Positions 24,721 to 26,942 of a stretch of DNA of 64,000 bases are shown here, one piece after another. The position numbers and the translations under genes were made by a program. The stretch lies in IMG/VR virus record IMGVR_UViG_3300030019_000003, positions 1-64,000 of that record; one strand, written 5' to 3'. The notes beneath the pieces were generated by a model that was not told the DNA's origin, did not search any database, and saw only the letters and a program-made list of their open reading frames with translations. How positions within the stretch are numbered: the first letter of the stretch is position 1; each line of letters begins with the position of its first letter.

Positions 24721-24753
24721 CTAGAGAGTGCTGGCTTATGCCGCACTCTCTAG
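24721..24753. terminator. Hairpin between convergent genes overlapping the polymerase stop codon
   Basis: CTAGAGAGTGC(T)GGC-TTAT-GCCGCACTCTCTAG. Confidence 0.6.
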
Positions 24754-25090
24754 TGTTTCTTTTTCTTTTTCTATCAGATACATAACACGTTTATTCAATT
24801 CAGGAAGCTGCGGAAAGTTCATCATATTAGTAGTATATTCAATCGTGTTTACTTTACCAAAAAGAATATTCATATTTTGGTTTTTAAAATCATTCTTGTC
24901 AACACCATCGATATCAACGATCTCTCTTGTAGTTGTTTCCTTACTAACATTAGCCGATTGTCCATCGCTTGGGTAGCCACTGACCTGATCGACATCCAAA
25001 ACGTGCCCGCGCACATTGGTCATTAACCCAGTACCCTCATTAATAACTTCCATACCCTTATTAGTAACCAGATGGCTCTCTAATATTGCT
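24736..25090 (-). CDS. Split family-B DNA polymerase subunit (phiKZ gp82-like), exon 2
   Basis: Carries the motif-A-like HVLDVDQVSGYPS and NVSKETT; joins exon 1 in frame after intron removal (…LDRWIAILESHLVTNKG…). Confidence 0.8.
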
Positions 25091-25584
25091 CGATTTGTTC
25101 AGATAGTTCGTTAAGCTATCCCGCACCATGATGTGCTACGCTATGCCTTTCGTTAAGGTGTACTCTGCACACCGCATAGACCAGACTATATCATTACCCT
25201 CTGCTATCATCTCAGTAGGGTAGAAACTGTTTTGAAGTCACTTGACCTCTACTCCCAATATGGGATAGTCGTTGAACACACTCCACTGCCTAAGCATAGA
25301 GGAGCTTCGCTGCGCCGATTGCCCATTACACTTCCAGTAAGTATATCTATCTACTAGCAATTGATAACATCGCCTAGGTATAGTATATGTGTAGGTGTTA
25401 ACCATCTAAGGTTATATGTTAACGTTTTCACTATTCTTCACAGCATTACCTGTTAAGTTTCACGTTCTATTTATAGACGTGAGTAGTAGTTAACATCTTT
25501 AGGGGTTCCCCGCAATTAAGTATCTTTGCTGTACTAATTTCGTAGTACAGGGACTGCGCTATCGCTTATTAAGCAGCAGCTTTA
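25091..25584 (-). ncRNA. Group I self-splicing intron (IA2-like), 494 nt, no homing endonuclease ORF
   Basis: P AATTGCGGGGAACCCCT, Q AATGGGCAATCGGCGCAGCG, R GTTCAACGACTA, S TGATATAGTCT; P7 GACUA/UAGUC; P7.1 and P7.2 hairpins; 5' exon ends in U pairing with G of GUCC; terminal G at 25091. Confidence 0.9.
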
Positions 25585-26942
25585 ATCCATCGGTCAAGTC
25601 CTAGTATCTTGTCGTCATCAACACGACTAGGTTTAGAACCAAGAACCTTACCTCTATCAAGATAGAAGAAGTGTAACCCATCTACGATACGCTTAGGACC
25701 TGAGTTAAAGACATCAAATGTTGATGATCCAGATAACGTAGGTACGTTCGTAGAAAGATCTTTTGTTTTATTATCCAGTACCAACATAGACAAACAGTCC
25801 CACTGGTTATAGATAACATATTCTAAAGGTTTATTAGCTAACATATAGCGATGCCAATCGATACTATAAAGATTAGCAGTCTCGTCTGATTTAAAGGTTA
25901 ATTTTTTATATTCAACCCCTAACTCATGCTCTAGGATATTTGTTAAACTATACCCTCCTGGAACAGCTTTAGCACCTACACGTACATAGTTATACGACGC
26001 CATAGCATCTATGATATAGAACCTAGAAGCTGAAGTATATCTGTTCCACTTCTCATGTGGATCATAAGGTCTATACTTACCAGATTCTGTTAATTTAGAA
26101 GTAGCCCCATATGTAAGTTTAAAGTATCTTAACTCCTTAGGAAGTGAAGGGTCTGAGAAGATATCTTCATGTTTTACACCCGCCCTATCACATGCTGCCA
26201 TCACATGCTCAATATCATAACTGGCATTCCACATTGCTAATACATCTGGATCCCATTGATGTGCTGTAGCCATGGATTCTTTTACGATATCTATTTCAGT
26301 TTTACAAATAATATATTCGATATCTATACCTTCTGAAAAAGGTGTTTTAGGAATATATTTATCATAAAGATATTGTAACCTTGAAATAATATCACGTTTA
26401 TTATCAAAGAGCCGTTCATGAATATAAGTTTTTATTTTACCTTTCATAGCTACCGTAGCTATGACTATTTCTTCTGTATAGGTATCAACCTCTGTATCAT
26501 AAACACAGATGGACAATGGTGAAATAGCGTCAGGATATTTTACACGATATTGCTCTTTAATCATTGTAGCAGCTCTAACATCAAGCCCGTAAATAAATGG
26601 TGAGTCACAGACATCTCTAATATGAGTTTTACCTACATAGCGTTGTCCTAATCTAGAAGCAACTGATTTACCGAGATCTGTTTCTGTCGATGTGTACTTA
26701 GTAACTTTCTCTAATGATTCTGATTCTTTCTTTTGTTTATGATTTTGAAATGCTGGCTTTGTTATCCAAAAAGGTCTTTGATAGTTTTTAACTACCCTGA
26801 AAAAAGGTTTTACTGTTCCATCGGCATAATGCCACTTCTCTTTTATAAGATGGGTATCATCCCTAAGTCCAGTTACCGCGGGTAAATGTGTTACAAAAAC
26901 ACATTCCTTACCGACAACTACATTATTAGCGGGTTCGGACAT
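25585..26942 (-). CDS. Split family-B DNA polymerase subunit (phiKZ gp82-like, proofreading exonuclease half), exon 1
   Basis: DEDD-type motifs CVYDTEVD, WNASYDIE, YNQWDCL; spliced product is 570 aa. Confidence 0.8.

What the first reader, a model, noticed from the sequence alone, without database searches (positions are those of the whole stretch)
24736..26942. ORF-less group I intron hides the polymerase motif A of the split DNA polymerase
Seen in sequence: the 457-aa ORF stops at WIKAAA* and a separate 105-aa ORF carries DVDQVSGYPS. Between them lie all group I core elements (P, Q, R, S, P7 GACUA/UAGUC, P3 with one mismatch, P8, and the IA2-type P7.1/P7.2 hairpins). Splicing after U25585 and after the terminal G25091 gives an in-frame 570-aa protein reading LGLDRW-IAILESHLVTNKG. 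The 494-nt intron has no homing endonuclease, so it is either immobile or mobilised in trans. Automated annotation would call two broken genes. Established: phiKZ-like phages have group I introns in RNA polymerase genes. Whether this polymerase site is already described I cannot check.
Basis: seen in the sequence. Interest (0 to 1): 0.7.

Follow-up and report, generated by a model that had tools for sequence, protein, structure and literature searches.

The report
ORF-less intron in phage DNA polymerase
A 494-base self-splicing (group I) intron without its own mobility gene interrupts the N-terminal DNA polymerase subunit gene of an uncultivated phiKZ-like jumbo phage from peat; this is a sound annotation correction at a newly recognised insertion site, but the kind of element is well known.

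Summary
ORFs of 457 aa (25569-26942, -) and 105 aa (24736-25053, -) are separated by a sequence that Rfam scores as a group I intron (RF00028, 51.4 bits, cut-off 50, E 3.7e-10).

Joining after U25585 and after G25091 gives a 570-aa protein. It aligns without a gap across the junction to uninterrupted PhiKZ gp82-type DNAP-N proteins (W-I-[AVI]-[ITL]-L). Exon 2 carries motif A (DVDQVSGYPS, residues 485-494). The partner subunit DNAP-C lies intact elsewhere in the 252-kb genome.

The intron has no endonuclease gene. The closest relatives carry an intron at the identical site and codon phase, with an HNH/NUMOD1 homing endonuclease gene in the P1 loop.

Among 119 related protein clusters, 69 are uninterrupted, 22 stop at this site and 28 stop at a second site inside motif A. 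PhiPA3 and Goslar are interrupted at that second site, and the Goslar intron is already mentioned in a 2026 preprint.

Two more ORF-less group I introns lie in the same genome, in the terminase and RNA polymerase genes.

No spliced RNA could be found, so splicing is inferred. Verdict: a new member of a known kind, of modest interest.

The parts
25585..26942 (-). Exon 1 of the DNAP-N gene (PhiKZ gp82-type N-terminal subunit of the split family-B DNA polymerase). It holds the N-terminal and 3'-5' exonuclease domains (Exo I motif DTE at residues 149-151) and ends with the first two bases (AU) of the Ile453 codon.
   Evidence: phrog_3011 'DNA polymerase', E 1e-129, profile positions 5-462 of 576. 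34-37% identity to FLC9 gp346, RSL2 ORF179 and PA7 gp298. DTE motif.
25091..25584 (-). Group I intron, 494 nt, with no endonuclease ORF. GC is 41.5% against 34% for the window.
   Evidence: RF00028, 51.4 bits, E 3.7e-10. Boundaries from homolog alignment and P1. MFE z = -2.99. 73% identical to the ribozyme part of the orthologous intron in L013.
24736..25090 (-). Exon 2 of DNAP-N, 117 codons plus the stop at 24736-24738. It starts with the third base of the Ile453 codon. The first 12 codons (AILESHLVTNKG) lie upstream of the ATG that gene callers use.
   Evidence: phrog_3011 profile positions 464-568, E 5.7e-21. The alignment is conserved right up to the base after G25091.
24967..24996 (-). 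Polymerase motif A (DVDQVSGYPS, residues 485-494 of the spliced protein).
   Evidence: Aligns with DLDVSASYPN (FLC9) and DLDIVSTYPN (PA7). PhiKZ gp82 D562 in motif A is catalytic. Coordinates.
25569..25571 (-). UAA stop in frame with exon 1, 14 nt into the intron, in the loop of the P1a hairpin. It ends translation of unspliced RNA after ...WIKAAA.
25584..25588 (-). P1, 5' strand: GGAU|U. The last four exon bases plus the first intron base; the cleaved bond follows U25585.
   Evidence: Pairs with AGUCC at 25555-25551. A local RNAfold recovers the helix. The same GGAU/GUCC pairing occurs in L013, L014 and L015.
25551..25555 (-). Internal guide sequence AGUCC (P1, 3' strand). G25554 forms the U.G wobble with U25585.
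25558..25580 (-). P1a hairpin inside the P1 loop (GCUGCUGCUU / AAGCGAUAGC). In relatives this loop holds a 1.1-1.2-kb endonuclease gene.
25529..25550 (-). P2 hairpin (CUGUACUA-CGAAAU-UAGUACAG).
   Evidence: -8.1 kcal/mol. Different sequences form a 7-9-bp hairpin at the same place in L013, L014, L015 and the terminase and RNA polymerase introns.
25519..25525 (-). P3, 5' strand AGAUACU.
   Evidence: Pairs with AGUUUCU at 25228-25222 with one U.U mismatch. L013 has C-G at that position.
25509..25514 (-). P4, 5' strand (the 'P' element, AAUUGCGGG).
   Evidence: Rfam alignment
25322..25505 (-). P5 and a long P5 extension of about 185 nt. Only the L013 ortholog shares its full length.
25276..25314 (-). 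P4 3' strand (the 'Q' element, CGCA) and the P6 hairpin.
   Evidence: Rfam alignment. P6 pairs show compensatory changes.
25266..25270 (-). P7, 5' strand GACUA (within the 'R' element GUUCAACGACUA).
   Evidence: The terminase intron has the compensating GAUCA/UGAUC.
25234..25265 (-). P7.1 and P7.2 hairpins between P7 and P3', the mark of subgroup IA.
   Evidence: P7.2 pairs covary
25222..25228 (-). P3, 3' strand AGUUUCU.
25196..25221 (-). P8 hairpin.
   Evidence: -8.1 kcal/mol; Rfam alignment
25184..25188 (-). P7, 3' strand UAGUC (within the 'S' element AUGAUAUAGUC).
25102..25179 (-). P9/P9a, P9.1 and P9.2 hairpins. The P9.2 loop carries the UAACGAAC motif, largely conserved (AACG invariant) in all eight introns compared.
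   Evidence: The 3' end also resembles introns in rV5-like phage DNA polymerase genes.
25091..25091 (-). Terminal G (omega-G) at the 3' splice site.
   Evidence: It is the only G that gives an in-frame, gapless junction. The orthologous introns in L010, L011, L013, L014 and L015 also end in G before the same codon position.
24721..24753 (.). Strong hairpin (local fold -25.7 kcal/mol over a 78-nt window) followed by a U run, between the convergent DNAP-N gene and the 225-aa ORF; a likely bidirectional terminator. The DNAP-N stop codon sits in its loop.

Best explanation
The two ORFs are one gene, the DNAP-N subunit of a two-subunit family-B DNA polymerase of the PhiKZ gp82/gp50 type, interrupted by a 494-nt subgroup-IA group I intron.

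Inferred mechanism, following standard group I chemistry:
- The pre-mRNA folds into the P1-P9.2 ribozyme.
- An external guanosine bound at P7 attacks the bond after U25585, which sits in a U.G wobble with the guide sequence AGUCC.
- The freed exon-1 end then attacks the bond after the terminal G25091.
- The ligated mRNA encodes a 570-aa protein with the exonuclease domain and polymerase motif A. This pairs with DNAP-C (732 aa, genome positions 193175-195373).
- Unspliced RNA would give a 457-aa protein without motif A, ending at a UAA 14 nt into the intron.

The intron has no homing endonuclease gene, so it cannot mobilise itself. Its closest orthologs, at the same site, carry an HNH_3/NUMOD1 endonuclease gene in the P1 loop. 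Intron and exon have diverged by similar amounts. The simplest history is therefore a long-resident intron that lost its endonuclease gene in this lineage.

Shown here: the RNA family match, the splice-site geometry, the restored protein, and the orthologous and intron-less alleles. Inferred: the catalysis itself and the direction of endonuclease gain or loss.
For: - Rfam RF00028 over the full model, above the gathering score, starting at the proposed 5' splice site.
- phrog_3011: exon 1 covers profile positions 5-462 and exon 2 covers 464-568, so the two are contiguous.
- Gapless alignment of the spliced protein to the uninterrupted FLC9, RSL2 and PA7 proteins, with W-I-[AV]-[IT]-L across the junction.
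- The intron-less allele L022 reads ...TCATGGAT|AATT... continuously at the same point.
- P1 GGAUU/AGUCC with a U.G wobble.
- Five orthologous introns at the same site and phase, all ending in G.
- 17 of 35 RNAalifold pairs show compensatory changes, including P7 and P6. P2 hairpins have unrelated sequences.
- MFE z = -2.99.
- Conserved coding sequence runs 12 codons upstream of the first ATG of the 105-aa ORF, right up to G25091.
- DNAP-C is intact (phrog_2927, E 3e-180). In PhiKZ the two-subunit enzyme needs the motif A aspartate of gp82.
- The intron-bearing DNA is identical in three independent peat metagenome runs.
- Ribozyme 73% and exon 1 72% nucleotide identity to L013; 60% and 62% to L014.
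Against: - There is no direct RNA evidence. The single metatranscriptome run that holds the gene has only a 140-nt piece of exon 1 and no joint.
- The Rfam score is only 1.4 bits above the cut-off.
- P3 carries a U.U mismatch where the closest ortholog has C-G.
- P10 pairing with the 3' exon is weak or unclear.
- Loss rather than gain of the endonuclease gene rests on three endonuclease-bearing relatives only; the two other site-1 relatives are on truncated contigs.
Confidence: 0.88

Rival explanations
1. The intron is a dead relic. It no longer splices, so the polymerase N-terminal subunit is either a pseudogene or is made as two further pieces (457 aa plus 105 aa starting at ATG 25053) that assemble without covalent joining. 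That would make a three-piece polymerase.
For: No spliced RNA was seen. The Rfam score barely passes the cut-off. P3 has a U.U mismatch. An ATG with AAGGG just upstream exists at 25053. This polymerase family already tolerates one natural split.
Against: - The 12 codons between G25091 and that ATG are conserved in protein alignments with uninterrupted homologs. Only splicing can bring them into the protein.
- AAGGG lies only 1 nt from the ATG, a poor spacing, whereas the real start at 26942 has GAAGGGA at 6 nt.
- All conserved core positions are kept: 57 columns are invariant among eight introns.
- The genome is complete, recurs in many samples, and has only this one DNAP-N gene.
- 69 of 119 related clusters encode one uninterrupted protein.
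Confidence: 0.06
2. The intron splices, but at boundaries other than U25585 and G25091. For example, it might use G25100 as the terminal G, which would add three residues.
For: Boundaries were inferred, not measured. G25100 lies 9 nt upstream and is in a compatible phase.
Against: Only U25585 with G25091 gives a gapless match to homologs. With G25100 the junction would read WITNRAIL. The orthologs L013, L014, L015, L010 and L011 all place their terminal G directly before the same codon position. The U.G wobble in P1 is at U25585.
Confidence: 0.03
3. The interruption is an assembly artefact, or a chimera of two phage variants in the metagenome.
For: The genome is a metagenome assembly.
Against: Contigs from three independent runs cross both exon-intron borders with no differing base (records 1, 4, 11 and 12). 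Related phages from unrelated samples have an intron at the same place.
Confidence: 0.01

Closest known systems
Self-splicing intron in Escherichia phage Goslar DNAP-N (gp068, with the homing endonuclease gene gp069), noted in the Methods of bioRxiv 10.64898/2026.10.01.755736
   Same: Same gene family (chimallivirus DNAP-N, the PhiKZ gp82 type). Group I intron: Rfam 44.7 bits in L023. The gene is annotated as truncated, and motif-A-proximal coding sequence is cut off.
   Different: Goslar's intron sits 34-35 codons further downstream, inside motif A after the D-x-D (called site 2 here). It carries an HNH_3/NUMOD1 endonuclease gene. The window's intron is at the W-I site (site 1) and has no ORF.
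Unannotated ORF-less group I intron between PhiPA3 gp085 and gp084 (found here)
   Same: An ORF-less group I intron splitting DNAP-N of a cultured chimallivirus into two 'hypothetical proteins': Rfam 71.7 bits, exons ending ...HVADLD and starting VSTYPN....
   Different: It is at site 2 (motif A), is only about 350 nt long, and has a different ribozyme sequence. I found no paper in the searched library that describes it.
PhiPA3 gp210 intron in the RNA polymerase beta-subunit gene (Birkholz et al., Science 2024, PMC11620839), together with the PhiPA3 DnaB-helicase and Serratia 2050HW RNA polymerase introns
   Same: Group I introns in essential replication and transcription genes of phiKZ-like phages. 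The window's intron core is about 70% identical over 90-145 nt to the PhiPA3 helicase and 2050HW RNA polymerase introns.
   Different: They lie in different host genes. Those introns carry HNH endonucleases, and gp210 acts as a weapon against co-infecting PhiKZ. The window's intron has no endonuclease.
Classical phage DNA polymerase introns: SPO1/SP82 (I-HmuI), Bastille (I-BasI), LUZ24, Pf-WMP3, and rV5-like phages such as FFH2
   Same: Group I (mostly IA) introns at conserved sites of phage DNA polymerase genes. The relatives' endonucleases are I-HmuI-like (PF22083, HNH_3, NUMOD1). The last 44 nt of the window's intron are 86% identical to the FFH2 polymerase intron.
   Different: Those polymerases are family A or single-chain enzymes. 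Here the host gene is one half of a naturally split family-B polymerase.
T4 nrdB intron, an endonuclease-defective and non-mobile group IA2 intron (from general knowledge; see PMC2790892)
   Same: A splicing-competent intron kept without a working endonuclease, while a close relative (RB3) keeps an intact one.
   Different: T4 nrdB keeps a truncated endonuclease ORF. Here no remnant is detectable.

Membership tests
Group I intron (Rfam RF00028) | Conserved catalytic core (P3-P9 with the P/Q/R/S elements), scored by the family covariance model | tested here: met
   51.4 bits against a gathering score of 50, E 3.7e-10, model positions 1-253. 17 of 35 consensus pairs show compensatory changes across eight related introns.
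Group I intron (Rfam RF00028) | 5' splice site after a U that forms a U.G wobble in P1 with an internal guide sequence | tested here: met
   GGAU|U pairs with AGUCC (U25585.G25554). The orthologs L013-L015 have the same pairing, and the terminase intron has GGGU/GCCC.
Group I intron (Rfam RF00028) | Terminal G at the 3' splice site | tested here: met
   G25091. Five orthologous introns also end in G before the same codon position.
Group I intron (Rfam RF00028) | Removal restores an intact, conserved host reading frame | tested here: met
   570-aa frame. Gapless alignment to uninterrupted homologs.
Group I intron (Rfam RF00028) | Guanosine-dependent self-splicing | not testable with these tools
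   The only RNA run holds 140 nt of exon 1 and no joint.
Subgroup IA (IA2, T4 td-like) | Extra P7.1/P7.2 hairpins between P7 and P3' | tested here: met
   UCCCAUAUUGGGA and GAGGUCAAGUGACUUC at 25265-25234. P7.2 covaries.
Subgroup IA (IA2, T4 td-like) | Best match to a subgroup-specific model (IA2 against IA1, IA3 and others) | not tested
No subgroup models are available here.
Mobile (homing) group I intron | Intron-encoded homing endonuclease | tested here: not met
   The longest intron ORF is 55 aa and crosses core helices. tblastn with four relatives' endonucleases finds nothing in the intron. Relatives at the same site do carry HNH_3/NUMOD1 genes.
Mobile (homing) group I intron | A cognate free-standing endonuclease elsewhere in the genome that could act in trans | tested here: inconclusive
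   There is one 140-aa HNH_3 ORF at genome positions 186656-187078, with only motif-level similarity (28 aa) to the site-1 endonucleases. There is no GIY-YIG and no PF01844 HNH. LAGLIDADG was not searched.
Chimallivirus-type split family-B DNA polymerase (PhiKZ gp82 DNAP-N plus gp50 DNAP-C) | An N-terminal subunit with the exonuclease motifs and motif A, homologous to gp82 | tested here: met
   phrog_3011, E 1e-129. 34% identity to PA7 gp298, the 638-aa gp82-type protein. DTE at residues 149-151 and motif A at 485-494. Compare gp82 D151/E153/D562.
Chimallivirus-type split family-B DNA polymerase (PhiKZ gp82 DNAP-N plus gp50 DNAP-C) | A separate C-terminal subunit with motif C, encoded elsewhere | tested here: met
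   Genome positions 193175-195373 (+), 732 aa, DTD at residues 426-428, phrog_2927 E 3.1e-180. PhiKZ gp50 is 731 aa with D426.
Chimalliviridae (nucleus-forming phages) | Chimallin (ChmA) shell protein | not tested
   Not searched. 'PhiKZ-like' rests on the polymerase pair and the split RNA polymerase beta/beta' genes.

The most novel reading that the evidence does not exclude
In a large, uncultivated, AT-rich branch of phiKZ-like jumbo phages, the 35 codons in front of polymerase motif A may be a long-standing arena of intron warfare. Two insertion sites are occupied in about 40% of lineages, and endonuclease genes appear to have been gained and lost repeatedly in the P1 loop. On this reading the window's ORF-less introns (DNA polymerase, terminase, RNA polymerase) are not decaying relics. 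They would be kept because an occupied site shields the phage from relatives' HNH endonucleases during co-infection. The Ala-Ala-stop ending of all three intron read-through products might then act as an ssrA-like degradation tag for proteins made from unspliced RNA.
Probability: 0.12. Interest if true: 0.55.

Novelty: new member of a known kind. Interest (0 to 1): 0.3.

Why it matters
- Annotation: the phage's only DNAP-N gene is filed as two unrelated ORFs (457 and 105 aa), and the catalytic motif A ends up in an unnamed small protein. The same error affects about 40% of related metagenomic entries, and also PhiPA3 gp085/gp084.
- Biology: the segment just before motif A of the chimallivirus-type DNAP-N has two recurrent intron sites. 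Matched ORF-less, endonuclease-bearing and empty alleles are all available. That is good raw material for studying the homing cycle and intron-mediated competition between jumbo phages, building on the PhiPA3 gp210 work.
- It does not reveal a new mechanism.

Tried and rejected
- Megablast of the region against 50,697 phage records found no match. The IMG/VR pattern scan with exon 1 found no relative. Relatives came instead from the protein collection.
- RNA evidence: two run searches found one metatranscriptome, which holds a 140-nt exon-1 contig flanked by adapter sequence. There was no joint, so this neither supports nor refutes splicing.
- PDB sequence search with exon 1 found no hit.
- Pfam on the exons gave only a sub-threshold RNase_H_2 hit. 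PHROGs was informative instead.
- Rfam at E<=0.01 missed the introns in L015 and L016; at E<=1 it missed the 5'-truncated ones in L010-L012. Those were recognised by eye and by alignment.
- A hand-written structure for the count of structure pairs was not attempted. It needs a 670-character string, and the MAFFT alignment is out of register in P2 and P8. RNAalifold counts and per-sequence helices were used instead.
- I first took GGGGAU/GUCCCC as P1 of the RNA polymerase intron. The PHROG alignment of that exon runs on to ...DEHFV, so those boundaries are unsettled, and I do not use that intron as P1 covariation evidence.
- I considered an intein, a frameshift or another genetic code. None is needed, and nothing in the sequence suggests them.
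Full report
**What is there.** On the minus strand, a 457-aa ORF (25569-26942) ends ...LGLDRWIKAAA*. A 105-aa ORF (24736-25053) contains DVDQVSGYPS. Between them, Rfam's group I intron model RF00028 matches 25584-25163 over its full length, at 51.4 bits (gathering score 50) and E 3.7e-10. It is the only Rfam hit in the window, even at E<=1.

The model stops at P9. 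Another 72 nt of hairpins (P9a, P9.1, P9.2) run to G25091. The 494-nt stretch folds better than all 100 dinucleotide shuffles (z = -2.99). Its GC content is 41.5%, against 34% for the window.

**Splice sites.** Joining 25585 to 25090 gives a 570-aa frame. PHROG family 3011 ('DNA polymerase', 576 profile positions) is matched by exon 1 at positions 5-462 and by exon 2 at 464-568. The two pieces are therefore adjacent parts of one protein.

The spliced protein aligns without a gap across the junction to the uninterrupted proteins of Burkholderia phage FLC9 (651 aa), Ralstonia phage RSL2 (660 aa) and Phikzvirus PA7 gp298 (638 aa). The junction reads W-I-[AV]-[IT]-L. An intron-less metagenomic homolog (L022) reads ...TCATGGAT|AATTCTA... 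straight through the same point.

G25091 is the only G that gives this gapless frame. The next candidate, G25100, would add three residues. At the 5' site, GGAU|U pairs with AGUCC (25555-25551). This puts U25585 in the U.G wobble that marks group I cleavage sites, and a local RNAfold finds this helix unaided.

Conserved coding sequence (AILESHLVTNKG) extends 12 codons upstream of the first ATG of the 105-aa ORF, right up to G25091. This is hard to explain unless the exons are joined.

**The host gene.** PhiKZ's replicase is a 1:1 complex of DNAP-N (gp82, 638 aa: exonuclease plus motif A, with catalytic D562) and DNAP-C (gp50, 731 aa: motif C D426) (bioRxiv 10.64898/2026.09.30.755723). The spliced protein has the Exo I motif DTE at residues 149-151 and motif A at 485-494.

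The window is the first 64 kb of a complete 252,159-bp virus genome with terminal repeats, assembled from a peat metagenome. A 732-aa ORF at genome positions 193175-195373 has DTD at residues 426-428 and matches phrog_2927 'DNA polymerase' at E 3e-180. Motif A lies 32 codons after the junction, not at it.

**Relatives.** The closest 120 protein clusters (45-69% identity to exon 1) include the window's own. They fall into three length classes:
- 69 are uninterrupted (545-590 aa).
- 23, including the window's own, stop right after the W-I junction (site 1). Four of these run on in frame into an HNH_3 domain.
- 28 stop at own residue 487-494, inside motif A after D-x-D (site 2).

I fetched several of their contigs:
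- **L013** (68% identical protein) and **L014** have both sites occupied. A 34-codon mini-exon lies between two Rfam-detectable introns. The site-1 intron carries a 383-aa or 373-aa HNH_3/NUMOD1 endonuclease gene between the 5' splice site and the guide sequence, that is, in the P1 loop.
- **L015** has the endonuclease fused to exon 1.
- **L010 and L011** are truncated contigs that show the 3' half of a site-1 intron.

All of these have TGGAT| at the 5' site and G| before the third base of the Ile codon.

Among cultured phages, 58 of the 60 records sampled evenly from the 291 that matched showed no break near these sites. Goslar (gp068, endonuclease gp069) and PhiPA3 (gp085/gp084, ORF-less, Rfam 71.7 bits) are interrupted at site 2. 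The Goslar case is stated in the Methods of bioRxiv 10.64898/2026.10.01.755736. In the searched library I found no description of site 1 or of the PhiPA3 case.

**RNA structure support.** I aligned eight related introns: the window's, L013, L014, L015, L010, L011 and the genome's two other introns. This gives 57 invariant columns. RNAalifold returns 35 consensus pairs, 17 of which show compensatory double changes. These include P7 (GACUA/UAGUC against GAUCA/UGAUC in the terminase intron), P6, P7.2 and P9.1. P2 is a 7-9-bp hairpin of unrelated sequence in each intron. P3 has one U.U mismatch here, where L013 has C-G.

**Mobility and history.** The intron holds no endonuclease gene or detectable remnant. 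The genome's only HNH_3 gene is a free-standing 140-aa ORF at 186656-187078. It shares only the catalytic motif with the site-1 endonucleases. No GIY-YIG or PF01844 hit exists.

Ribozyme and exon 1 nucleotide identities track each other: 73% and 72% to L013, 60% and 62% to L014, 50% and 59% to L015. This fits long co-inheritance of intron and gene rather than recent transfer. The three relatives whose P1 loop is known all carry an endonuclease gene, so loss in this lineage is the simpler reading. That direction is an inference.

DNA contigs from three independent peat runs cross both borders without a difference, and no intron-less form was seen.

**What is missing.** There is no spliced read. 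The one RNA run holds a 140-nt piece of exon 1 only. Splicing is inferred from four things: the intact core, the conserved exon 2, the essential role of motif A, and the fact that this is the genome's only DNAP-N gene.

**Verdict.** This is a new member, at a newly recognised insertion site, of a well-known class: group I introns in phage polymerase genes. The wider pattern adds some interest but no new mechanism. That pattern comprises two hot spots flanking a 34-codon segment, ORF-less, endonuclease-bearing and empty alleles, and three ORF-less introns in one genome.

Noticed in passing
genome G000 positions 135020-135458 (-), outside the window; locus L008: A second ORF-less group I intron (RF00028, 52.2 bits) splits the large terminase gene into 257-aa and 421-aa ORFs. 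The N-terminal part matches phrog_2 (terminase large subunit, E 1.7e-42). P1 would be GGGU/GCCC. Its ribozyme is closer to the L014 polymerase intron (68%) than to the window's own polymerase intron (52%). Boundaries were inferred by analogy only.
   Followed up: partly
genome G000 positions about 232907-233415 (+), outside the window; locus L007: A third ORF-less group I intron (RF00028, 56.6 bits) interrupts an RNA polymerase subunit gene next to the catalytic NADFDGD motif (phrog_2987, E 3.4e-100). The exact splice sites are unsettled: a P1-based guess (after ...GGGGAU) conflicts with the PHROG alignment, which runs on to ...DEHFV.
   Followed up: partly
window 25569 and 24736; genome 135444, 133634, 232949: Only 5 of 229 ORFs of at least 100 aa in the genome end in Ala-Ala-stop, where about 0.8 would be expected. 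All five are exon ORFs of the three intron-bearing genes: three read-throughs into introns, plus the true C-termini of DNAP-N and the terminase. The read-through stops lie in or next to GC-rich hairpins (GCN codons), and the DNAP-N stop sits in a terminator loop; the terminase end has no hairpin. It could be a by-product of GC-rich stems in an AT-rich genome, or an ssrA-like C-terminal tag. Unresolved.
   Followed up: partly
L013:4353-6549 and L014:4353-6543 (relatives): The two closest relatives carry two group I introns in DNAP-N, 102 nt apart. This leaves a 34-codon mini-exon that ends in the D-x-D of motif A. The first intron holds an HNH_3/NUMOD1 gene in its P1 loop.
   Followed up: yes
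L024:4798-5144 (PhiPA3, HQ630627 about 74539-74885): The DNAP-N gene of the cultured phage PhiPA3 is split into gp085 and gp084 by an ORF-less group I intron of about 350 nt (Rfam 71.7 bits) inside motif A (...HVADLD | VSTYPN...). Both parts are annotated as hypothetical proteins. 201phi2-1 gp144/gp143 may be the same case.
   Followed up: partly
genome G000 positions 186656-187078 (+); locus L018:1219-1641: A free-standing 140-aa HNH_3 endonuclease gene starts at the stop codon of a 398-aa ORF. The first ~230 residues of that ORF match the C-terminal part of an RNA polymerase beta-subunit family (phrog_2986 profile positions 304-537 of 539). It may mark another invaded or fragmented polymerase gene.
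   Followed up: no
L016 (NCBI GCA_053226485.1, 214,766-nt contig in a Campylobacter coli assembly): A jumbo-phage-sized contig in a Campylobacter coli genome assembly encodes a DNAP-N about 50% identical to the window's, interrupted at site 2 by a 426-aa ORF with sub-threshold HNH_3/NUMOD1 matches. This is a possible host clue for this AT-rich phage branch.
   Followed up: no
window 25102-25120 and 25141-25179: The sequence UUAACGAA occurs twice in the intron's 3' domain. A closely related motif ([UC]AACG[ACU][ACU]) in the P9.2 loop is conserved in all eight related introns, and the 3' end resembles rV5-like phage polymerase introns. It may be a tertiary-contact motif of this intron lineage.
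   Followed up: no
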